A stretch of DNA of 64,000 bases from Entomortierella parvispora E1425 (lineage: Eukaryota; Fungi; Mortierellomycota): NCBI GenBank assembly GCA_020891255.1, contig BQFW01000006.1, forward strand, positions 2,170,001-2,234,000. The letters run 5' to 3'. Both the position numbers and the translations under genes were made by a program. The notes beneath the pieces were generated by a model, which saw nothing but the letters and a program-made list of their open reading frames with translations, searched no databases and was not told where the DNA came from. Positions 15,351 through 26,221 of this stretch are shown piece after piece (within the stretch, counting starts at the first letter, position 1; every line of letters starts with the position of its first letter).

Positions 15351-17482
15351 TTGTCTCCCAAATCGGGAAGAGTGGTGTGACAGGTCGTGTTTTGCCACCA
15401 ATCCACATCCCGCACTTTCGCCGCAGCCATGTTTTTTTTGCATGCACCAGCCCTCGTCCTCGCCCAACATCCTCTTTACTACCAACAGATACCTCTTTAG
15501 GATTCCTTTCGTCCACAAGCTCAAGAAATTTCTCCGGTAGTCAGTTTTGCTGCATCATCTTTGGTTCTTCGCCTTACCTGGCTACTGTTCGCCACTCAAA
15601 TGGCCTTCATTGTTGCCATGCCTGCTGCCTAACACGCAGAGTCCGGTCTGGCTGTTTCTACGGTCTTTATTTCATGATACACTTTCAGCGTTGTTCTCCG
15701 TTTATTCCTACCTCACCAGAAGCAGTCCATCCATCTTGATAGCTTTTACTGCGTACTCCACCTAGTGGATAGCAGCTACACGCGCCAGCAATTGCACCGA
15801 GTCATTGGTTGGTTTGATGGTCTGATGGTATTGAAATTCGCATGTGGAGACGAAAGACCCACATTTTCTCTCGACTGAAGAGGAGTATATTGTCGCCTGC
15901 TGCCACTACACGGGACACTATACCTTTTTTTCTTTCTTTTTTTTTTTCTTGGTCCCTGGCTATAGTCTTCATTCATCTATGGACGGGATCAATTGAAAGT
16001 GGGTTTATATTAAGAAACCAACCGAGCACAGGGCATTTGATTGTGGAAAGTGAAGGCATCGCTGCAGCAAGTAGGTTTGTCGTTGTATGATCAGGACAAA
16101 GTTCCCATCGACTCTCACAGTTCCACCCTCGAGACGGGAAGAACAGTTTTCACTGACGCGGTTGAAACAACTTTCAACTTCATCTGCACTGCATCGTCTT
16201 TGAAGCAGATCCGACAAGCCGAATTGTTTGTTGACGTGCTTTTTTTTTCCACCGAACAACAATTTGTTCCGAAAGAAGGACATTACGTGCAACATGAGTG
16301 GAGTTGCACACGCCTCGTACAAATACACCCACGGTCCCCTTTTTTTGCGGAAAAGCATGTGGGAATAGACTACGCAAGAGGCACCAACGGGTCCCCTGAT
16401 CAGTACAAGGAGATCGCGAACCCCATAGATGAGATCTTGTTTTCCACCTCTTGTTTATTTTCTGTTGGGGAAGAGGTAACGAGGATCTTCACCTCAAGGT
16501 AGAGCCAAGACGACTCGTCAGATTATTTGAGGGAGAAAGTTCGCTTAAGATAGAATGTGGACTACGTAATTGTGAATCGAAGGAGGTTGGCTGGCGGTGA
16601 GGGGTTCAAAAGAGCCCATCGATGATAAACTATCTGCTGGCGCCCAAAATGAAAACCAAGTTGACAGGAACGAATCGAAGAGCTAGAAGAGTGGAGAAAG
16701 CATTCAGAGAAAACTAATGAGTGTCTTAGGCGCCAGCGCGCCTATGGATGGATAGTTTCGTCTCCACACAATGGTGCCAGAACCCATGACCACAAGAACG
16801 CAAGAATGTAGGAGGACAAGATTGCAAGAAAGCAGCAAAAGAAGAATTGTTGCACCGCATCTCCTATGAGATTCAGGCCCACCCTCCCTTTGGCTTTCCC
16901 CAATTGATCTGTAGTTGACCTTGTCAAGGACATGTAACCCCTCTGCGTGGCGTGGCATGGCAGAGTACGTGTGGCATGTTGTGTCTCTGTGTTGCGTTGG
17001 TTTGCACATGCTCCTGATTTTTTTTTTTCGCCTTCTCCACTTCCCAATAACCATAAAAGGGCCAACATATTCAATTCCATTCAATCGGCTCGCTCCTTCC
17101 TCGCTGCATTTCGCCAGCCGAGAGTTTATTTCCTGCTGTCTGCCGTCTGCCGTCTGCAGTTGCCCGTTGCAAAAACTCCCCCTGTCCTTTCGCCCATCTC
17201 GTTGAGAGCAGCTGGGCGCAACAGCTCACAACTCACCTCGACCCTCTGTCCCCTTCCTCTCCTCTCGCTGGGTTGAGGACTTGAGGTGCAGACGACTCTT
17301 CCCCCTCTCTCTTCTTTTCTTTTCTCATCCTCACCCCACATTTATTATTTGTGCAGACCTTCGCTCCACACTCTGCTTCTCGCTCTTCTTTTCGTTCTCC
17401 CATTGCGCTCTCCATTATATCCAAGGACGGACAACACCAGGACAGACAATCTATCGCCCTTCATAATCAACAGGAATCAGCC

Positions 17483-20400
17483 ATGGCCACCCCTCCTGAC
17501 CATAACAACCTCAACATGAATAGTCCGACAAATCTTGGCAGCGGTGCCATGGATCTTACTCAAGAAAATCGCCAGAAACGACTCAAAGCCGGTACTGCCT
17601 GCACCAACTGTCGACGAAAGAAGCTGAGATGCACAGGCACACCCATGTGCCAACGCTGCACCACACATGGTCTCGATTGCGTCGTCGACGAGGCCTTGTT
17701 CCTGAAGACCAACAGCCCCCAGAGTCTTCAAGGAAAACCTGTTGCGCGCCCCTCGATCCACAGCAACCCCTCCTCTACATCAACACACCGCTCTTCAAAG
17801 AGCCATCACCACCATCACGGTCACAGCAGCAGCAGCCACAGTGGACAGGCCAACTACCACCATCACCAGCAGAACCGTCATAATCACAACAATAACAATG
17901 GACATCACGATCAAGGATCGGTGTCATCACCGTCTGTCTACTCGGACGACTGCATGGAGCCTGCAGACTTCGTGGACTCGCTGTCGGATCGAAGAATGTC
18001 TGCCAGCAGTGCTACAAGCCTGTCGAGTATGAGCCCCAGCCCTTCACCTGGATACTCTTACAACTACTTGGATCAAGGAAGCAGCAGTAACAGTCATCAC
18101 AGCAACCACAACAACAATGGCTCCTCTTCGTCTTCTTCCAAAGCACGGAAATCATCTCACCCCCGTCCTAGGAACGATGGGTCTGATTCCTACGGTCCCT
18201 CAGGTCCATCTTCCTCCTCGACATCATACCCAATGGGGTCGTCATCGAACCCACAGCAGTCGAGCAAGAAGAGATCGTCTAAGGATCAAGGCACGACAAA
18301 GCACAAACAAAAGAGACACAACTCTCGCGAGGACGACGACCCTCGCTCACCGTCCCCTCTTCCTGAAGAGTCCCACTACTCCAACAGCAACAGCAACAAC
18401 TCGACTGGAAGATCTACTTCAGCCTCGACCTCAACTGGCACGTCCACCGGAGGAGCAAACTCGTCCTCAGCCAAGGGCAAGGACAAGGAGGAAGACTACA
18501 AGTCTGTTGTGAGCACGATGAGTTTGGATGGTCATGGTCAACAGTGAGTCCTTCTTTCCTGCTTCATTGCTCTCATTAGCCTCTCCACCTGTGCACTCTC
18601 CACCGAGTGGTGGTGTGGTTATTCCCCTGCTGCAATATCATTCATCATTCAATCAACCTAAATTTCTAAACCTTGACCAAGATATTAACCACTCTCGATT
18701 TTTTATTTTTTCTTGCATGTAGTTTCCACGGAAGTAGCTCAGGCTTCTATGTTTGTCAACTCAGCTCGCGCTATCGTCAGGGTGTCTGTAAGTCTCTTTC
18801 CTGTGATTGCTCGATCACGCCTGACTGGCTCTTGTAAACGAGCTTGTTGGGGATACAATGAGCTCACAATGGACGTTATCTTTGTTCCTGTGGCATAGAC
18901 CCTCTCCCAATGGCCCATCTCAACGATAGCGATCTGTGGTCACATTCGCTGCAAATGACTAGTGAACGGGAACTTCCGACAAAGCCAGAGATGGACAATT
19001 TGCTGGGACTTTACTTTCGATACATGTACCCGTTTGCGCCCATGTTCATCCGCAGGACGTTTATGGAACACCACAATTCCTCCAGGCCCGACCTTTCGCA
19101 GATTCTTATCTTGAATGCCATCTTCTGCAACGCTTGCTGGTACTCGGATGATCCTGTGGTACGACAAGACTCGACAAAGTTCTTCAACAGGGCAAAGATT
19201 ATCTTGGACGAAACGTACCATGTCTCGCGAGTCAGCACTGTCCAGGCCTTGTTGCTCATGTCCCATCACCAGTACGCAGTCGGAAACTACTCCGGAGGAT
19301 GGCTTTACACCGGAATGGCTACCCGAATTGCCCACGTAAGCTGAGATTTAACTGTTGTCACTTTAGGCACTTCTCTACTTGATCATACTCACTCATTCCT
19401 TGCACGTCTTACAGGATATTGGTTTGCATCGCCAGGACGTGCACCAGGTGAATGATCCTGAGGAAGCCGAAGTCAGGAAGCGAGTTTGGTGGGCGGTATA
19501 CATTGCGGATCGTCTTGGAGGTGGTATTTTGGGCCGCCCCCTCAATTTGCGGGACAAGGAGTACAATGTGCAGATGCCCTCGGACGACTGGATTGCAGAG
19601 CTTGGTGGGGATGATGAAGTCCAGTACCCATATGAACCGGAGCGTATCATCTCCTGCCGACTGCTGTGGGCCGTGAAACTGTTCATGCAGATGGGCAATG
19701 TCCTCAACACGATGCACTGTATTGAGGCCGAAATCAACGGAGCCTTCCTAGCGGATATCTCAAGGACACAACTGCCTCAGCTCCACAACAGTCTGACTTC
19801 TTGGTTCCTGTCCCTTCCCAACGAGCTCATGTATACACCTTACACAATGTCTCCCAACTCTAACCACCCCCCGTCTCCGCCCACGGCGCTCATGCACATG
19901 TTCTACTATACATGCCTGACCATGTTGCATCGACCATACCTCCGACCCGTCAATTCTGCGGCGATCGATGCCAACTTCTTGGTCTCTTCTCGCAACATTT
20001 GTACAGCAGCGGCGACGAATGTCTGCCACATTGCAGATTCGCTGATGCTCCATGGACAGCTCCGGGATACTTGCTATTACGGTATGGCCTGTCTTCTCGC
20101 TGCAGGCACTGTGCATGTCCATAACGCCATCACGCCCACCCCCAGTAACCGAGAGACGACTCGGGCAGGACTGTCCAAGACGGTTAAGGCCGCGCACGAA
20201 TTGGTGAAGACCTTCCCTGTGGCCGAGTCCCTGGTTGCGGTGGCTTTAGACGTGTTCGCGAGCCAGACGAGTTCGGTTCCTACGGAAATGGCGGCGTCGT
20301 TCATTGATATTTCGACCTTTGTGGCCCCGTTTATTGATCTGACCCAGTTGCAATCGACCTCGATCGGAAACATTTACGAGGCCGCGCGGTTAGCCAAGTT

Positions 20401-20954
20401 GGCGAAGGATGGTCCCGGGCCAGCACCTTCGATTCAGTTGCGCCACCCTTATGGAAACTTCTCGATGCCACTTCCAGAGTCGACGAGTAAGGATGCTAAA
20501 TCAAGCAATCTGAGTTCAATGTGGCAGAGCCATATCTCGACGGCAGTGGCAATGGCCGCGATCGCTTTCGGAGGGTCGGACCCACAGCAGGAGCAACAGT
20601 TCTTTGCAAATCCCCTAGAGTTGCCAGAGGCCTTGAGGTTAGCGCCAATTGACTCGATGATGTTTGGAGGCCTTGATGGGGCCAATGGTGGGCTGGCTGG
20701 ATTTGGAACGGACCCCACGATGCAGTTTGGGACCCCAATGTCGAACGTAACAACCACTGCCACCACTTCGACTGCCACGGCCTCAGCAGTCCCTGTGACG
20801 AACAGCGGTGGGTTCCAGATGACCCAGAGCACAGATTCCCATCTGCTGCAATACCAGAACATGCAGCAGCAACAACCTCCTATGCAACCTCAACATACCT
20901 ACCAGCAGCAGCCACAGCAGCAGCAGCAACAGATGCAACAACAACAAGTTCAGC

Positions 20955-20994
<40 letters not shown>

Positions 20995-21655
20995 GATGCA
21001 GCAACAGCAACAGCAACAGCAACAAATTCAGCAACCACAGCAAGACTACCAGCCACAACAGCAGTTGCAGCAACAACAGCAACAACAGCAACAGCAAGGT
21101 CAACAATTGCCAGCGCAACCGCAGCTGAACCAGCAGCAGATCAACCAGGTGGCCGTTGGGATGATTCAAAACTCTCAGTTTGGGAGCACGCCTACCTCCA
21201 ACCCTTTCAGCACCTCACAGGCACTGAGCTTCATGCAAGCAGCATTGGCTTCGTCCCTACATGTCGCTGATAATAGCAAGACTACTTCCCAGCCTATGCA
21301 GTCCTCATCCCTTCAGACTCAGCAACAGCAGCAACAGCAGCAACAGCAGCCCTCTCAGCAGTCTGAGAGTGTCAAGATGGAAGACGACACCGCGGATCCT
21401 CCCTCTCCACCTGCCATCTCGTCTGATGACATGGATATGGAATCTGCATCTTTGACCAGTGATACCCCAAGTCCTGCCTCGATGAATGGTCCACGACAGG
21501 ATGTGCAAATTCAGGTTGATCAAAATAGCCACGGCGCCAACTCGGCAGCTGGGTTCATGTCTGGGATGATGCCCATGTCGATGACGGCGGAAGAGAAACA
21601 TGTAGTTCAAAAGGTTAACACACTTCTCTTCGGAAACCAGGGCATGGAATGTTGA
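17483..21655 (+). CDS. Zn(II)2Cys6 transcription factor with fungal-specific TF (middle homology) domain and polyQ tail
   Basis: ACTNCRRKKLRCTGTPMCQRCTTHGLDC, then LYFRYMYPFAPMF, VQALLLMS and IGLHR...EVRKRVWWAVYIADR. Three introns (about 18510-18723, 18787-18898, 19337-19414). Confidence 0.93.
20863..21140 (+). repeat. CAA/CAG trinucleotide repeat encoding polyglutamine
   Basis: Long interrupted (CAA)n/(CAG)n runs inside the Zn2Cys6 gene. Confidence 0.95.
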
Positions 21656-21810: not shown

Positions 21811-22695
21811 TTATGAGTCCTCTTGGGACTGAACGGAAGACACGCTCAAGAGCTGCGCCGAGTACTTAAGGTCGACCTGGGCCACCATCTCCTGGATCGC
21901 CTTCTCAGACAACATCAAGCCGCCCTTTTGACCTCCCGTCGTCCAAAGGACCAATTTCTTGTCTTTAAAGAACACGCTCACGCCCGCCAACCCTGGCCGG
22001 TTCTTGAAATGTTGTCGCAATCGGTTCGCGCAAGCCTCACAAGCCATACCCTCGACATGAATCTCGTACTTGATAAGTGCCTTTGGTTCGAAAGACACAT
22101 CAACGGGAGCCGACGACAATGGACCCAATTGGGCGCCAGAATCACCACCATCTCCACATTTAGGTTCAGCAGCACCTGGCTGTGCTTTGGTTACCCCACA
22201 GAACTCTAGAGTGTCTGCCATCTTGATGGTTGTCGCCTTATTGATACCGGCGAGTTGCTTCGTGACCGTGGACCAAATGTAGAACGGGCCAATGGAAAGA
22301 TTGTTATTCAGTTGGATCAAGGGGCTCAAGGACGACGATTGGTTGTAGACGGACACCATCTCGGGTGTCGCTGTGAGGAACAAAGTAATGGCAAGCGTAA
22401 GTACGGTCCTGGCCGAGAACCGATACTTGAAAAGAGTGTAGAGCATCAAGAGGCCAGAGATGGAGAGAAAGAGGGGACGGAATTGGGTCAGGACTGAGAA
22501 TCCAGCACAGCCGATCGAGAATAGGTTGAGGAAAAGTTGCACTACACAACAGGAAGACGAGAGGAGACCGAGGACCAATGCAGAGAGATAGGAAGATCTT
22601 GGAGAGGATGTTGGAGACGTGGAGTGCTTTTTTGCTAGGCGGATAGCCTTCTTCTCGGAAGGATCGACCCTTTTACGGTCTTTGAGGCTGGTCAT
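21811..22695 (-). CDS. MerT/MerF-like membrane metal transporter domain fused to a C-terminal HMA (MerP-like) domain, intronless
   Basis: Three hydrophobic segments: LVLGLLSSSCCVVQLFLN (vicinal CC in TM1), GCAGFSVLTQFRPLFLSIS and TVLTLAITLFL. C-terminal YEIHVEGMACEACANRL has the GMxCxxC motif. Likely start AAAAAATG at 22695. Confidence 0.8.
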   Translation of the reverse strand: MTSLKDRKRVDPSEKKAIRLAKKHSTSPTSSPRSSYLSALVLGLLSSSCCVVQLFLNLFSIGCAGFSVLTQFRPLFLSISGLLMLYTLFKYRFSARTVLTLAITLFLTATPEMVSVYNQSSSLSPLIQLNNNLSIGPFYIWSTVTKQLAGINKATTIKMADTLEFCGVTKAQPGAAEPKCGDGGDSGAQLGPLSSAPVDVSFEPKALIKYEIHVEGMACEACANRLRQHFKNRPGLAGVSVFFKDKKLVLWTTGGQKGGLMLSEKAIQEMVAQVDLKYSAQLLSVSSVQSQEDS

Positions 22696-22985
22696 TTTTT
22701 TGAGGCGGTGGTGTGGGACGAAGTACAAACGAGAAGAACTATTTATGGGAACGAGGATGAAGAGGAAAGAAGGTGGAGAAACGAGGGAATTCCAGAATGG
22801 AGACGTGGAAGAAGGGGGAAAGAGGACGCGAGGGATTTCAAGAATGGAAATGAAAGCGAAGGCGAAGAAGACAAGAAATGGGGGCGCATGCATGCATTCA
22901 TGCAGTCACATTCTTGAGTTTGCATGTTTCTTTTTTTTTTTGCATCTTTCCTTGTTTCATTGCATCAACGTATTCAGGAAAAACC

Positions 22986-24014
22986 ATGGCTTCGGCAACA
23001 TCCCTTAATGCCGCCACGACGCCTGTCAGTAGCACAACTAGCACCAACAGTCATAACCACAGCAACACGGCATCCGCATTCACGTCCCCTGGCTCGTCTT
23101 CCGCGCCTCGATCTGCAGGACCAAATGGACCCGCAACAACAGCAATAGGCGCCAGCGGCGAACCATCGGCAGGAACATCAAGTCCAATTGCAGAAGCCAA
23201 TGCTGCGGAATTAGCTGCTGCTGCTGCTACAGCAACCGAGGAAACGAGGCAAGATCTGGAATTAAAACTCAAGGAATTGATTGAATGCCTTCTCGAGCTG
23301 AGCATCACCGTCTACGACTTCCAACCCGAAAGCAACTCGCTCGTGCACCAGAAGATGTAAATGATGCTTTTTTAGGATTGCAAAGGGATAGCTCTGGCCT
23401 GGACCGACTTTGGACTATGAAAGTCAAAAAGGACATCCTCACTGACGAAAAACACTTTCTCTTGAAATTGCTGCTCCACTAGTCAAGAGCTCATTGCACA
23501 GATATCCGAGATTGACGGCTTCAAGGACAAGCTGGAGATGATGGTGCCGATGGAGGTTCTTGGGTAAAGACTGGGCTGTCTCCTGAGTTGAAATACTTCA
23601 CAATGGTTTTGGGATCTATGAGATATCCTAACATTGTCAACCTACACTTGCTCACCTCCTTCATAGATTCATTGAAGATGGACGGAACCCAGATCATTTT
23701 ACAAAGAGCTTTATTGAGAGTGTTGCAGGAGAGAACCAGTTCACCAACGGAAAGATCACGGCCATGAAGGTAAAACTAGGATCAGTCTCCCCTTTCTTTT
23801 CATAACACGTACGTTTCGAACGCGGTACTGACATAGGCTTCCGTCCAATACATAGACTTTCGAGGATGCTTTGACACAGAACTTGGGCAATATATTCCCA
23901 GAGGAACTAAGGGGTTATCAGAGTCTTGTACAGGAAGCAACAACGACATCATCAGGGGCGCTCACGGAAACAGCAGCTGCTATGGACACCAGCACAGTCT
24001 CTCCTCAATCCTAG
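22986..24014 (+). CDS. MED10: Mediator subunit Med10/Nut2 (4 exons)
   Basis: LKELIECLLELSITVYDFQPES...VPMEVL|FIEDGRNPDHFTKSFIE...NQFTNGK matches the Med10 signature P.EVL.YIDxGRNPD.YT. Confidence 0.92.
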
Positions 24015-24259: not shown

Positions 24260-26221
24260 CTACCGACTGCGTCTTGCGCGTTTCTTCGGTCGAGGACTTT
24301 GGTATTGAGCGTCGAGGGCGCGCTTTATGACTGTTGACTCGGAAGAAGGATGCCTCCGCCCTCTATTCTGGAATGGCTCCATCATCAATGGATTTTCGCT
24401 CGCGGTTTGGATCCAGCCAATCAGATGGATCAAGGACTGGGCGATCCAGATCCAGCGCTCTACACCCAGGTATAAGATCCTACGTGGGATGGGAACCGAT
24501 GGCACAGAAGCATCTTCGGCATGTGTACTCGTGGTCTCGCCTTGATTCTGTCCCTCAAGCTCCATTTTACTCAGACGTGCTCTTGAGGACAGGAAGCGAT
24601 GGATCCTGGCCAAAATCCATTGACCATGTTCAATCCAGGCCTTTGCATCGTGAATCCTCTCAGACCCCCTCGGAGAGTATTGGTCTGTTGGAACCAAGAA
24701 GAGGAGCACAAGCTCTACGACCATGTACTCCCGCTTGAACTGGACACGAGATTGGAATTCTTGCGGGTTGGGCAAGGTGATCAGGTCCAGACAATAATGG
24801 ATCAGAGTAATGTACAGCCTGTGCGGAGGTAGGACAAGGCCCGAGGTCGGGGGATCTATCAAAGCATCGTCGCTGTACTCAGGAAGGTTGATCTCGTTGA
24901 AAGGGTGGTAACAGAGATCCTGGGCCGCGTTTAGTTGATAGTACTGGAGTAGCAAACTAGGGTCGCTAATTGGGCACGAGGATGCCAAAGCAAAAGATTG
25001 GAGGTATTCGAGAAAGCTGGTATTTGGCTCCCAGAGATACCGATCTGACAATTCGTGCTCTACCATCGCCAGATTTTCAGTGGCCTCAAGTCCAAAAGGA
25101 TCGCTCGGATCTTGAGCGGGGCTCATCACTGCTCGCGGTGTCTCAGTACTGTGAACGTAGTCTCGAGGAAGGAGGCCTATCGTGACCTTAAATAGATCCG
25201 CTAGATTCTCAAATGTGGAAATAAAACGGATCCTTCGACACAAGGGGCACGCGACATTGCCTGCGCGATTCAAACTCTGCTCGCATTTCCAACAGGTTCT
25301 GTGACCACAGTTAACATTGACCTTCATGATGGTCGTTGATCCACTCTGGAAGCAGATCGGACAATCTCCTTTTTCCACCAACGAGGTCGAGCCGGCGCCA
25401 TATAATGTTGTTAAGCTGTTCAAGAGGGAGAGATTACGACCGTGCTCGAGTGCCTTGGGCTCAACTGTATTCTTGAACCAGTCTTGAATGCTCTGGATCG
25501 AGGTGTTTTGCAAGAAATCAGACACACGACGGTACGCGTTGCTGCTGCTTCTGTTGTTGTGGTGGTCTGTAGCCAGAAACATGGATCGACTGCGACCGCG
25601 GAATGGAAGGCGTGGATGTATGATATGCTGTTGGAACGCAAATGAAAGGGGGCCGGAATTCGATGTCAATGGGTCGTCGGGAACGACCTCCATCTCGGGC
25701 GAGGGTTCATCTGACCTGACAAGTTCTGGCAGTGGTGGAAACAAAGGCGAAGAACAGCAGCTCGTCCACTCCATCATGTCATCGTCGGCCTCTGGATCAT
25801 CACTCTCAACTGAACGGTAACCCTCTTCCTGGCCTGGGATTGGAGATGCTGGGACCGAGGCCATCCACAATGAAGAATAGAGATTCCCAGATGAGTTGGC
25901 TGTGGGATCGTAGCACCTTGGTGTTTCGCCGTCTACGCGCACTTGAACGAGATCGTGGTGGCTGTGATCCGCCAAAGCTTGACCTTGGACGCCATGACCT
26001 CGGACTGGATTCTCGAAAGTGGGTTGCAAAGTGGTCGTCAAAAGCAGAGAGGATTTGGGCGACGAATCCATAAAGATTGAGGGCTGGTAGCCAAAGCTCG
26101 TGAACATGGGGGGTGAAGTAAACTTGTGCATGATACGTGAGCCTTTGAAAACAGGAAAGGGCACAAAAGAAAGAGGAGAAGATGAAGGTGAGGGAAGAGA
26201 AGAAAAGTAAATGAAGGACAA
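24260..26221 (-). CDS. RING-finger (C3HC4) protein, otherwise uncharacterised; true start probably about 26100-26130
   Basis: CPICF...NCGHRTCWKC...ACPLCRR. Intronless ORF of 653 codons with a basic C-terminus RPKKRARRSR. Confidence 0.75.
   Translation of the reverse strand: MSFIYFSSLPSPSSSPLSFVPFPVFKGSRIMHKFTSPPMFTSFGYQPSIFMDSSPKSSLLLTTTLQPTFENPVRGHGVQGQALADHSHHDLVQVRVDGETPRCYDPTANSSGNLYSSLWMASVPASPIPGQEEGYRSVESDDPEADDDMMEWTSCCSSPLFPPLPELVRSDEPSPEMEVVPDDPLTSNSGPLSFAFQQHIIHPRLPFRGRSRSMFLATDHHNNRSSSNAYRRVSDFLQNTSIQSIQDWFKNTVEPKALEHGRNLSLLNSLTTLYGAGSTSLVEKGDCPICFQSGSTTIMKVNVNCGHRTCWKCEQSLNRAGNVACPLCRRIRFISTFENLADLFKVTIGLLPRDYVHSTETPRAVMSPAQDPSDPFGLEATENLAMVEHELSDRYLWEPNTSFLEYLQSFALASSCPISDPSLLLQYYQLNAAQDLCYHPFNEINLPEYSDDALIDPPTSGLVLPPHRLYITLIHYCLDLITLPNPQEFQSRVQFKREYMVVELVLLFLVPTDQYSPRGSERIHDAKAWIEHGQWILARIHRFLSSRARLSKMELEGQNQGETTSTHAEDASVPSVPIPRRILYLGVERWIWIAQSLIHLIGWIQTASENPLMMEPFQNRGRRHPSSESTVIKRALDAQYQSPRPKKRARRSR

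What the first reader, a model, noticed from the sequence alone, without database searches (positions are those of the whole stretch)
21811..22695. Fungal MerT-like transporter fused to an HMA domain (MerTP-like architecture)
The N-terminal half resembles bacterial MerT/MerF: vicinal Cys-Cys in TM1 (SSSCC) and a later (F/Y)RP motif before TM2. The C-terminal half is a GMxCxxC metal-binding domain like MerP/CopZ. This bacterial heavy-metal uptake architecture is not a standard fungal transporter family, and the gene is intronless among intron-rich neighbours. It is a candidate for a horizontally acquired or patchily retained Hg/Cu/Cd handling system; no merA partner is present in the window.
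Basis: partly seen in the sequence, partly recalled or inferred. Interest (0 to 1): 0.7.

Follow-up and report, generated by a model that had tools for sequence, protein, structure and literature searches.

The report
Eukaryotic MerT-like membrane protein with metal-binding domain
This Mortierella-family fungus carries a real, conserved gene whose protein joins a membrane domain distantly related to the bacterial mercury transporter MerT to a classic metal-binding domain; it was not recently borrowed from bacteria but belongs to a large family, for which I found no published study, spread across early fungi, green algae and many protists.

Summary
A 294-codon intronless gene lies on the minus strand at 21811-22695. 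It has the vicinal Cys-Cys in helix 1, an FRP loop motif, three predicted membrane helices, a disordered linker and a C-terminal HMA domain (GMACEAC).

Profile comparison shows real but distant homology to bacterial MerT. hhalign gives 93-94% probability over helix 1, the loop and helix 2, against 0.1-0.3% for the MerC and MerE controls. All curated MerT and MerTP score cut-offs are missed.

The gene is under purifying selection (dN/dS 0.19 overall, 0.07-0.09 in the two domains). Its composition matches its neighbours, and microsynteny is shared with the two closest relatives.

Recent horizontal transfer is not supported. Mortierellomycota form one strongly supported clade, and fungal monophyly is not rejected. 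The family counts 835 clusters at 50% identity. Named members come from chytrids, Mucoromycota, Glomeromycota, green algae including Chlamydomonas, a liverwort, haptophytes, Chromera, an amoebozoan and a heterolobosean.

Every member examined has a third cysteine (CC-x12-CAGF). The aligned members have no cysteine in the helix 2-3 loop, where MerT has its cytoplasmic pair. The motif was not found in 185,579 prokaryotic genomes.

The function is untested. The most likely reading is a cysteine relay for a soft metal, probably Cu(I). I found no paper describing the family.

The parts
21811..22695 (-). Complete intronless coding sequence, 294 codons plus stop, of the MerT-like/HMA protein
   Evidence: ORF and translation. 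dN/dS is 0.19 against the closest relative L005 and 0.17 against Gryganskiella L006.
22591..22695 (-). Basic N-terminal tail (residues 1-35), predicted to be cytosolic
   Evidence: Rich in Lys and Arg, read directly from the sequence. The 20 residues before helix 1 and the helix 2-3 loop carry the positive charge, and the 20 residues after helix 3 carry none. The AlphaFold model shows no regular structure here.
22498..22590 (-). Membrane helix 1 (residues 36-66) with invariant S47, C49, C50, Q53, L54, L56, N57, C63, A64 and G65. The Cys-Cys codons are at 22546-22551 and the third Cys (C63) at 22507-22509.
   Evidence: Alignments A1-A4. The CC-x12-CAGF spacing is constant in the single-unit proteins carrying both motifs. 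The model has a helix at 32-65. hhalign places C49/C50 on MerT C24/C25.
22474..22482 (-). Loop motif F72-R73-P74 (family consensus PYRP), shared with MerT
   Evidence: hhalign aligns it with the EPYRP of Tn21 MerT and the AYRP of a bacterial MerT-HMA fusion. R73 is conserved in 93% of alignment A2.
22423..22473 (-). Membrane helix 2 (residues 75-91)
   Evidence: Model helix 69-90, hydropathy, and inclusion in the hhalign match to MerT.
22345..22413 (-). Membrane helix 3 (residues 95-117) with conserved P111 and E112, followed by invariant N118. It is preceded by the basic loop KYRFSAR, which has no cysteine.
   Evidence: Model helix 95-123 and conservation. This part does not align with MerT, and the aligned members have no cysteine in the helix 2-3 loop where MerT has its cytoplasmic pair.
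22081..22344 (-). Variable disordered linker (residues 118-205). It has two N-x-S sequons (N118, N132) and two cysteines (C166, C180) shared only with the closest relatives.
   Evidence: pLDDT is below 50 for 131-191. dN/dS is 0.46 here. The length varies widely across the family.
21832..22080 (-). HMA (heavy-metal-associated) domain, residues 206-288, with the GMACEAC metal site at 22030-22050
   Evidence: Pfam HMA at E 1.6e-4. The model has a beta-alpha-beta-beta-alpha-beta fold with pLDDT mostly above 90. Foldseek matches the plant HMA7, CCS, CopA and MerP domains, with target TM-scores up to 0.87. dN/dS is 0.09.
22696..22893 (-). 5' leader and promoter that is open in frame but not coding. 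A conserved element CATTCTnGAAnTC occurs twice, at 22787-22799 and 22834-22846.
   Evidence: The frame is not preserved against the closest relative. Both copies of the motif are conserved in L005 and L006. They are the only two matches in the 64-kb window, against 0.15 expected by chance.

Best explanation
The locus encodes a functional membrane protein of about 294 aa, inherited vertically within Mortierellomycota. It belongs to a large eukaryotic family built like bacterial MerTP. The parts are a basic N-terminal tail, three membrane helices whose first two are homologous to MerT, a flexible linker and an HMA domain with a CxxC metal site. Shown: the homology, the architecture, purifying selection on both domains, the eukaryote-wide distribution, and the family-specific third cysteine. 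Inferred: the N-terminus is cytosolic, so the HMA domain faces the outside or the lumen of an organelle, as MerP faces the periplasm. In that reading the HMA CxxC captures a thiophilic metal ion. It then hands the ion by ligand exchange to C63 at the outer end of helix 1 and on to C49/C50 deeper in the same helix. Cytosolic thiols or a chaperone take it from there. No mercuric reductase is linked and the family is old and widespread, so the physiological substrate is more likely Cu(I) than Hg(II), although Hg(II) and Cd(II) would probably also be carried.
For: Homology to MerT. hhalign of the 28-sequence membrane-domain profile gives 93.8% probability (E 1.7e-7) against Tn21 MerT. It gives 93.4% (E 2.5e-7) against a bacterial zf_CopZ-MerT-HMA protein that sits beside a MerR gene. 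In both, the Cys-Cys and the YRP loop are in register. The controls MerC and MerE score 0.3% and 0.1%. Pfam MerT is hit by 13 of 15 members and NCBIfam MerTP_fusion by 15 of 15. The nearest ESM Atlas clusters, by features and by structure, are bacterial MerT families. HMA fold. Selection: dN/dS is 0.07 in the membrane domain, 0.09 in HMA and 0.46 in the linker. Architecture: among the 130 newly returned proteins of the best 150 library hits, T-H is seen in 74 and T-H-T-H in 26. Topology of this protein: positive charges lie in the N-terminal tail and the helix 2-3 loop, with none after helix 3. C-terminal [DE]L endings, which resemble ER-retrieval signals, occur in 14 of 177 members against 1.6 expected, which fits a lumenal C-terminus in those lineages. 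Vertical descent.
Against: No experiment bears on metal, direction or location, and no RNA run could be listed for this gene. All curated MerT and MerTP thresholds are missed (12.3 against 32.9 bits; 31.1 against 180 bits). Helix 3 does not align with MerT. The aligned family members have no cysteine in the helix 2-3 loop, where MerT has its cytoplasmic pair. Across the whole family the charge bias is nearly balanced, so the topology is not secure outside Mortierellaceae. The clustering of conserved polar residues on one face of helix 1 is not significant: 8.5% of random sets reach it. The membrane part of the model has only moderate confidence, with 10-residue block means of pLDDT 52-84. This fungal protein has no ER-retrieval-like ending.
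Confidence: 0.6

Rival explanations
1. This fungus or its recent ancestors acquired a bacterial merTP gene by horizontal transfer and use it for mercury handling.
For: The architecture is that of bacterial MerTP, and the best NCBIfam hit is MerTP_fusion. The gene is intronless.
Against: GC (0.518) and GC3 (0.62) match the neighbours. The gene order RING, Med10, this gene, Zn2Cys6 factor is conserved in two related genera. All Mortierellomycota form one clade at 99/98 support, next to Glomeromycota. Monophyly of all fungal copies is not rejected, p-AU 0.31. The family motif was not found in 185,579 prokaryotic species genomes. The true bacterial fusions examined lack the third Cys and keep the cytoplasmic cysteines. 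No mer gene is in the window.
Confidence: 0.04
2. The protein is not a transporter but a membrane-anchored metallochaperone, a metal sensor, or a thiol-disulfide relay. In the last case the helix-1 cysteines would pass reducing equivalents to keep the tethered CxxC domain reduced.
For: The membrane domain is tiny, at three helices. The cytoplasmic exit cysteines of MerT have no counterpart in the aligned members. MerT-like domains are also found fused to TusA sulfur-relay domains in bacteria. An HMA CxxC in an oxidising lumen would need reduction.
Against: The closest characterised relatives, MerT and MerF, are transporters (established knowledge). The conserved polar and cysteine positions run the length of helix 1, which suits passage across the membrane rather than mere anchoring. 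T-H-T-H tandem forms look like fused transporter subunits.
Confidence: 0.2
3. The same protein works in the opposite direction. It takes Cu(I) from the cytosol, passes it through the helix-1 cysteines and loads the lumenal HMA domain, which then supplies secretory or organellar copper enzymes.
For: ER-retrieval-like C-termini in algal and protist members suggest an endomembrane location. Some protist members have long N-terminal extensions that may be targeting peptides. A passive cysteine relay has no built-in direction.
Against: By homology, the MerP to MerT relay runs from outside to the cytosol. P-type ATPases already perform lumenal copper loading in eukaryotes (established knowledge). 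Nothing in the data gives a direction.
Confidence: 0.12
4. It is a dedicated Hg(II) uptake protein that feeds an unlinked mercuric reductase elsewhere in the genome.
For: Homology to MerT and the MerP-like Tyr-containing HMA domain.
Against: No merA lies in the 64-kb window. The words 'mercuric' and 'merA' occur in none of this scan's notes on the genome, which is weak evidence. The family is conserved under strong selection in many lineages from unpolluted habitats, which fits a nutrient metal better than a toxin.
Confidence: 0.04

Closest known systems
Bacterial MerT (Tn21/Tn501 mercuric ion transporter; Pfam PF02411, NCBIfam PRK13751)
   Same: Three membrane helices. A vicinal Cys-Cys in helix 1 preceded by Ser or Thr. 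A (P)YRP motif in the first loop. Helix 1, the loop and helix 2 align at 93.8% hhalign probability.
   Different: Scores fall far below the curated cut-offs. The cytoplasmic Cys pair of MerT between helices 2 and 3 has no counterpart in the aligned members. A third cysteine, invariant in the members examined (CAGF), and the QLxLN motif are present in helix 1. Helix 3 is not alignable. There is no mer operon or MerR context. The named carriers are all eukaryotes.
Bacterial MerTP and MerT-HMA fusions (NCBIfam NF033556 MerTP_fusion; zf_CopZ-MerT-HMA proteins such as P0303; NF045683 MerT/CopZ selenoprotein)
   Same: The same domain order: a MerT-type membrane domain followed by an HMA domain after helix 3. 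The short eukaryotic forms (172-185 aa) have about the same length as MerTP (186 aa).
   Different: The bacterial fusions keep the MerT-type helix 1 (no third Cys) and the cytoplasmic cysteines, and P0303 sits beside a MerR regulator. The window protein reaches 31 bits against a cut-off of 180.
MerF, MerC and MerE (other small mercury transporters)
   Same: Small membrane proteins that use cysteine pairs to move Hg(II).
   Different: No detectable relationship to MerC or MerE (0.3% and 0.1%). The membrane-domain profile matched no solved-structure sequence even at E up to 10; I recall that MerF has a solved structure, but did not check that here.
Soluble HMA metallochaperones and ATPase metal-binding domains (Atx1/CopZ, CCS domain 1, HMA7/ATP7 domains, MerP)
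   Same: The ferredoxin-like fold and the GMxCxxC site.
   Different: Here the domain is tethered to a MerT-like membrane domain and is predicted to lie on the non-cytosolic side. To my knowledge the characterised eukaryotic HMA domains are cytosolic.

Membership tests
MerT (PF02411 / PRK13751) | Score at or above the curated family cut-off | tested here: not met
   Pfam gives 12.3 bits against 32.9, and NCBIfam 17.4 bits against 150. The best family member reaches E 2.3e-5.
MerT (PF02411 / PRK13751) | Vicinal Cys pair in helix 1 and the PYRP-type first loop, alignable with MerT | tested here: met
   hhalign gives 93.8% (E 1.7e-7) with CC and YRP in register and 93.4% against a second bacterial MerT domain.
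MerT (PF02411 / PRK13751) | Second Cys pair on the cytoplasmic loop between helices 2 and 3 (C76/C82 in Tn21 MerT) | tested here: not met
   The loop is KYRFSAR, without cysteine. No aligned family member has a cysteine in this loop.
MerT (PF02411 / PRK13751) | Mer operon context (merR, merP, merA) | tested here: not met
   tblastn with the R100 MerR, T, P, C, A, D and E proteins finds nothing in the window beyond the HMA domain itself at E 0.21. The neighbours are Med10, a RING-finger gene and a Zn2Cys6 factor.
MerT (PF02411 / PRK13751) | Hg(II) transport activity | not testable with these tools
   This needs uptake or sensitivity assays.
MerTP fusion (NF033556) | MerT-type membrane domain followed by a MerP-like HMA domain in one polypeptide | tested here: met
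   Domain order. It is conserved across the family: T-H in 74 and T-H-T-H in 26 of the 130 new proteins analysed.
MerTP fusion (NF033556) | Equivalog-level score of at least 180 bits | tested here: not met
   31.1 bits.
HMA domain (PF00403) | Beta-alpha-beta-beta-alpha-beta fold with a GMxCxxC loop | tested here: met
   The model has strands and helices in that order, with pLDDT mostly above 90. Foldseek matches HMA7, CCS, CopA and MerP with target TM-scores of 0.63-0.87. The motif is GMACEAC.
HMA domain (PF00403) | Pfam gathering score | tested here: inconclusive
   The window protein scores 22.4 bits against 24.8, just below. All 15 aligned members match at E up to 1, the best at 1.8e-12.
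Eukaryotic CC-x12-CAGF / HMA family (unnamed; defined here) | LLSSSCC-x2-QLxLN-x5-CAGF in helix 1, a (P)YRP loop, (S/T)PE in helix 3, then an HMA domain | tested here: met
   The window protein has all of them, with Q for P in the loop. It scores E 1.5e-29 against the family profile.

The most novel reading that the evidence does not exclude
The CC-x12-CAGF/HMA proteins are an undescribed, ATP-independent cysteine-relay pathway for Cu(I) or another soft metal. It would be ancient in eukaryotes and would work alongside CTR channels and P-type ATPases. It would have been kept in chytrids, Mucoromycota, Mortierellomycota, Glomeromycota, green algae and many protists, and may have been lost in Dikarya, animals and vascular plants (none named among the hits). 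The tandem T-H-T-H forms would be antiparallel fused dimers with a metal-binding domain on each side of the membrane.
Probability: 0.3. Interest if true: 0.8.

Novelty: new variant of a known kind. Interest (0 to 1): 0.6.

Why it matters
Mer-type cysteine-relay transporters are treated as a bacterial speciality tied to mercury-resistance operons. This work shows a distinct, strongly conserved eukaryotic branch with hundreds of sequence clusters. It occurs in experimentally tractable organisms such as Chlamydomonas reinhardtii (CHLRE_03g207650v5) and Mortierella alpina. It also occurs in ecologically important ones: arbuscular mycorrhizal fungi, the amphibian chytrids and haptophytes. If the family moves copper or other soft metals, it adds a new class to eukaryotic metal homeostasis and to models of metal uptake and tolerance in soil fungi and algae. 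It would also place an HMA domain outside the cytosol, which to my knowledge would be a first for eukaryotes. For the window itself the practical result is a corrected annotation: a 294-aa protein on the minus strand, not a recent bacterial import.

Tried and rejected
1. Recent horizontal transfer is rejected on composition, synteny, phylogeny and the lack of prokaryotic carriers of the motif.
2. The longer 360-aa ORF, which is also the JGI model of the closest relative (P0002), is rejected. The 198-nt extension aligns only with frame-breaking indels.
3. The sequence search of solved structures with the membrane-domain profile gave no hit even at E 10.
4. tblastn of a family membrane domain against 72,556 plasmids gave no match at E 10.
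5. RNA evidence was not obtainable: no run could be listed.
6. Seven literature searches (MerT with HMA and fungi, MerT-like, MerTP, PF02411, the Chlamydomonas gene identifier and others) found no description of the family. The only trace was a table entry of a weak MerT Pfam hit in a Chloroidium genome paper, PMC5509433.
7. The helical-face clustering of conserved polar residues in helix 1 is suggestive but not significant: 846 of 10,000 random sets reach it.
8. The family-wide positive-inside rule gives nearly balanced charges, so it does not settle topology beyond Mortierellaceae.
9. Crude hydropathy could not count the helices of the tandem proteins reliably.
10. 'CopZ' labels on JGI hits might have meant bacteria. 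The one such hit whose contig was inspected carries SH3 and C2H2 genes and is eukaryotic.

Full report
**What is there.** The feature is a single uninterrupted ORF on the minus strand, 21811-22695, encoding 294 aa. The ORF stays open upstream to 22893 (360 aa), and the JGI model of the closest relative (P0002) uses the equivalent upstream ATG. The two 198-nt extensions align only with indels that are not multiples of three, so the extension is leader sequence and the start at 22695 stands.

**Anatomy.** An AlphaFold2 model was built on a 47-sequence alignment.
- It gives three long helices (32-65, 69-90, 95-123) and a disordered linker (131-191, pLDDT below 50).
- It gives a confident beta-alpha-beta-beta-alpha-beta domain (206-288, pLDDT mostly above 90).
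- Foldseek places that domain with plant HMA7, CCS domain 1, CopA and ZntA N-terminal domains and MerP, with target TM-scores up to 0.87.
- Hydropathy agrees with three membrane segments.
- In this protein the Lys and Arg residues lie in the N-terminal tail and in the helix 2-3 loop (KYRFSAR), with none in the 20 residues after helix 3. This predicts a cytosolic N-terminus and an extracytosolic HMA domain, the same arrangement as MerT plus periplasmic MerP.

**Relation to Mer transporters.**
- The single protein gives only weak family hits: Pfam MerT E 0.17, NCBIfam MerTP_fusion E 1.6e-7 and MerT E 3.5e-3. All are far below the curated cut-offs.
- The signal is consistent across relatives. Of 15 diverse members, 13 hit Pfam MerT (best 2.3e-5) and all 15 hit MerTP_fusion (best 2.9e-13).
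- A profile of 28 membrane domains was compared with the MerT of plasmid R100 (Tn21), taken from the annotated record. hhalign gives 93.8% probability and E 1.7e-7 over 50 columns. The Cys-Cys falls on MerT's Cys pair and the PYRP loop on MerT's EPYRP.
- A second bacterial protein gives 93.4%. It is a zf_CopZ-MerT-HMA fusion that sits beside a MerR gene.
- MerC and MerE, used as controls, give 0.3% and 0.1%.
- The ESM Atlas returns bacterial MerT clusters as nearest neighbours by language-model features and by structure. Its scores are below 0.9, so this is a lead only.
- Homology therefore covers helix 1, the loop and helix 2. Helix 3 does not align. The aligned members have no cysteine in the helix 2-3 loop, where MerT has its cytoplasmic pair.

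**A distinct eukaryotic family.**
- The word-index search found 72 relatives.
- The exhaustive profile search found 835 clusters at 50% identity with E up to 1e-3, and 504 with E up to 1e-10.
- The single-unit proteins that carry both motifs share a constant CC-x12-CAGF spacing, with invariant Q53, L56 and N57, and conserved P111/E112 and N118 around helix 3.
- The third cysteine aligns with Gly in both bacterial MerT domains.
- The domain order is conserved. Among the 130 newly returned proteins of the best 150 hits, 74 are T-H and 26 are tandem T-H-T-H.
- Named sources are all eukaryotic:
  - Mortierellaceae genera (14 were placed in the tree).
  - Glomeromycota: Funneliformis, Glomus, Dentiscutata.
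  - Mucoromycota: Umbelopsis, Spinellus, Phycomyces, Pilobolus, Bifiguratus, Jimgerdemannia.
  - Chytrids: Rhizophlyctis, Entophlyctis, Batrachochytrium, Polyrhizophydium, Zopfochytrium.
  - Green algae: Coccomyxa, Chlamydomonas reinhardtii CHLRE_03g207650v5, Volvox, Astrephomene, Scenedesmus, Symbiochloris, Elliptochloris.
  - A liverwort (Calypogeia), haptophytes (Chrysochromulina, Prymnesium), Chromera, an amoebozoan (Gocevia) and a heterolobosean.
- No Dikarya, animal or vascular-plant protein was named. Only part of the hits carry names, so absence there is not shown.
- A JGI hit labelled 'copper chaperone CopZ' lies on a 918-kb contig with SH3 and C2H2 genes, so it is eukaryotic.
- A scan of one genome for each of 185,579 bacterial and archaeal species for the NxFSxGCAGF motif found no relative.
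- Several members come from transcriptomes (TRINITY, MMETSP), so the family is transcribed in other organisms.

**Real gene, inherited vertically.**
- Against the closest relative (78% identical), dN/dS is 0.19 overall, 0.07 in the membrane domain, 0.09 in HMA and 0.46 in the linker.
- GC (0.518) and GC3 (0.62) match the window (0.502) and the neighbouring transcription factor (GC3 0.60).
- The gene order RING-finger, Med10, this gene, Zn2Cys6/Fungal_trans factor is the same in the window, in the metagenomic relative L005 and in Gryganskiella L006. It differs in Lobosporangium.
- In a maximum-likelihood tree of 46 units, all Mortierellomycota form one clade (99/98). The window is sister to Gryganskiella (99/95). 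Glomeromycota are the next branch and Mucoromycota group together.
- AU tests do not reject monophyly of all fungal copies (p 0.31) or of Mortierello-, Glomero- and Mucoromycota together (p 0.44).
- The gene is intronless in every fungal locus inspected, so lack of introns is a family trait of a short gene, not a mark of transfer.
- No mer gene is in the window.

**How it most likely works (inferred).** By homology with the MerP to MerT relay, the tethered HMA domain would capture a thiophilic ion on the non-cytosolic side. It would pass the ion by ligand exchange to C63 at the outer end of helix 1, next to conserved R73, E112 and N118. The ion would then move to C49/C50 deeper in the helix, along a face carrying S46, Q53, N57 and S60, and on to cytosolic thiols. 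That facial clustering is suggestive only. The family is old, widespread and strongly conserved, and no mercuric reductase is linked. Cu(I) is therefore a more likely physiological substrate than Hg(II), and specificity is open. In green-lineage and some protist members the C-terminus ends in [DE]L in 14 of 177 cases against 1.6 expected. This resembles ER-retrieval signals and fits a lumenal C-terminus, but the window protein has no such ending. The main rivals are a chaperone, sensor or redox-relay role without transport, and transport in the opposite direction.

**Novelty.** I found no paper describing this family. One algal genome paper merely lists a weak MerT Pfam hit in a table (PMC5509433). 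A red-algal paper states that no merT accompanies the horizontally acquired merA of Cyanidiophyceae (PMC9812998). Databases call these proteins 'HMA domain-containing' or 'hypothetical'. I class it as a new variant of a known kind: a eukaryotic branch of the MerT-type membrane domain with its own cysteine pattern, fused to HMA.

**Limits.** No expression data were available for this gene. Topology, metal, direction and cellular location are inferred. Only the best 150 of 835 library hits could be inspected. The paper library is incomplete.

Noticed in passing
Related proteins P0073, P0076 (Chromera velia), P0057, P0064, P0084 and others; not in the window: Many protist members are tandem T-H-T-H proteins of 400-630 aa. 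They have an extra strongly hydrophobic N-terminal segment and a 6-residue insert between CC and CAGF in the second unit. If each unit has three helices, the two units would be antiparallel and the two HMA domains would face opposite sides of the membrane, like a fused dual-topology dimer. The helix count could not be settled with crude hydropathy.
   Followed up: partly
C-termini of family members, e.g. P0049 (Coccomyxa), P0046 (Calypogeia), P0052, P0055, P0092, P0095: C-terminal [DE]L endings (-ESEL, -KVEL, -QEEL, -IDEL, -DREL) occur in 14 of 177 members against 1.6 expected. They resemble K/HDEL-type ER-retrieval signals and suggest a lumenal C-terminus and an endomembrane location in those lineages. 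The window protein ends in -QEDS.
   Followed up: partly
window 22787-22799 and 22834-22846 (minus strand), in the 291-bp divergent promoter shared with the Med10-like gene: Two copies of CATTCTnGAAnTC, which contains the heat-shock-element-like core TTCnnGAA. Both are conserved in the orthologous promoters of L005 and L006, and they are the only two matches in the window (0.15 expected). This is a candidate stress-responsive or metal-responsive cis-element.
   Followed up: partly
Gene tree: The liverwort Calypogeia copy, on a 34-Mb scaffold, groups with Glomeromycota plus Mortierellomycota rather than with green algae. The volvocine algal copies nest beside chytrids, while Coccomyxa lies elsewhere. 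This could be weak resolution of a 166-column alignment, old paralogy, or transfers between eukaryotes.
   Followed up: no
window 22156-22200 (residues 166-180 of the protein), minus strand: The linker carries two extra cysteines (F-C-G-V and K-C-G-D-G-G). They are shared with the two closest relatives (P0002, P0003) but not with the rest of the family. They could be extra metal ligands or a disulfide specific to this subclade.
   Followed up: no
window 17351-21655 (+), 22986-23357 (+), 24260-26221 (-): The neighbours are a glutamine-rich Zn2Cys6/Fungal_trans transcription factor split over several ORFs, the first exon of a Med10-like gene (identified only by synteny with Gryganskiella), and a RING-finger protein. 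This four-gene order is conserved in L005 and L006.
   Followed up: partly
Database models P0029, P0221, P0226, P0275: Some public gene models fuse this family's protein to a neighbouring gene: an MMtag-domain protein in Mortierella sp. AD010, and phosphoribosylglycinamide formyltransferase in Batrachochytrium salamandrivorans. These are probably annotation merges, not real fusions.
   Followed up: no
ESM Atlas neighbours: Bacterial clusters exist in which a MerT-like membrane domain is fused to a TusA sulfurtransferase domain (Campylobacterota). This hints that MerT-type domains serve thiol-based relays beyond mercury.
   Followed up: no
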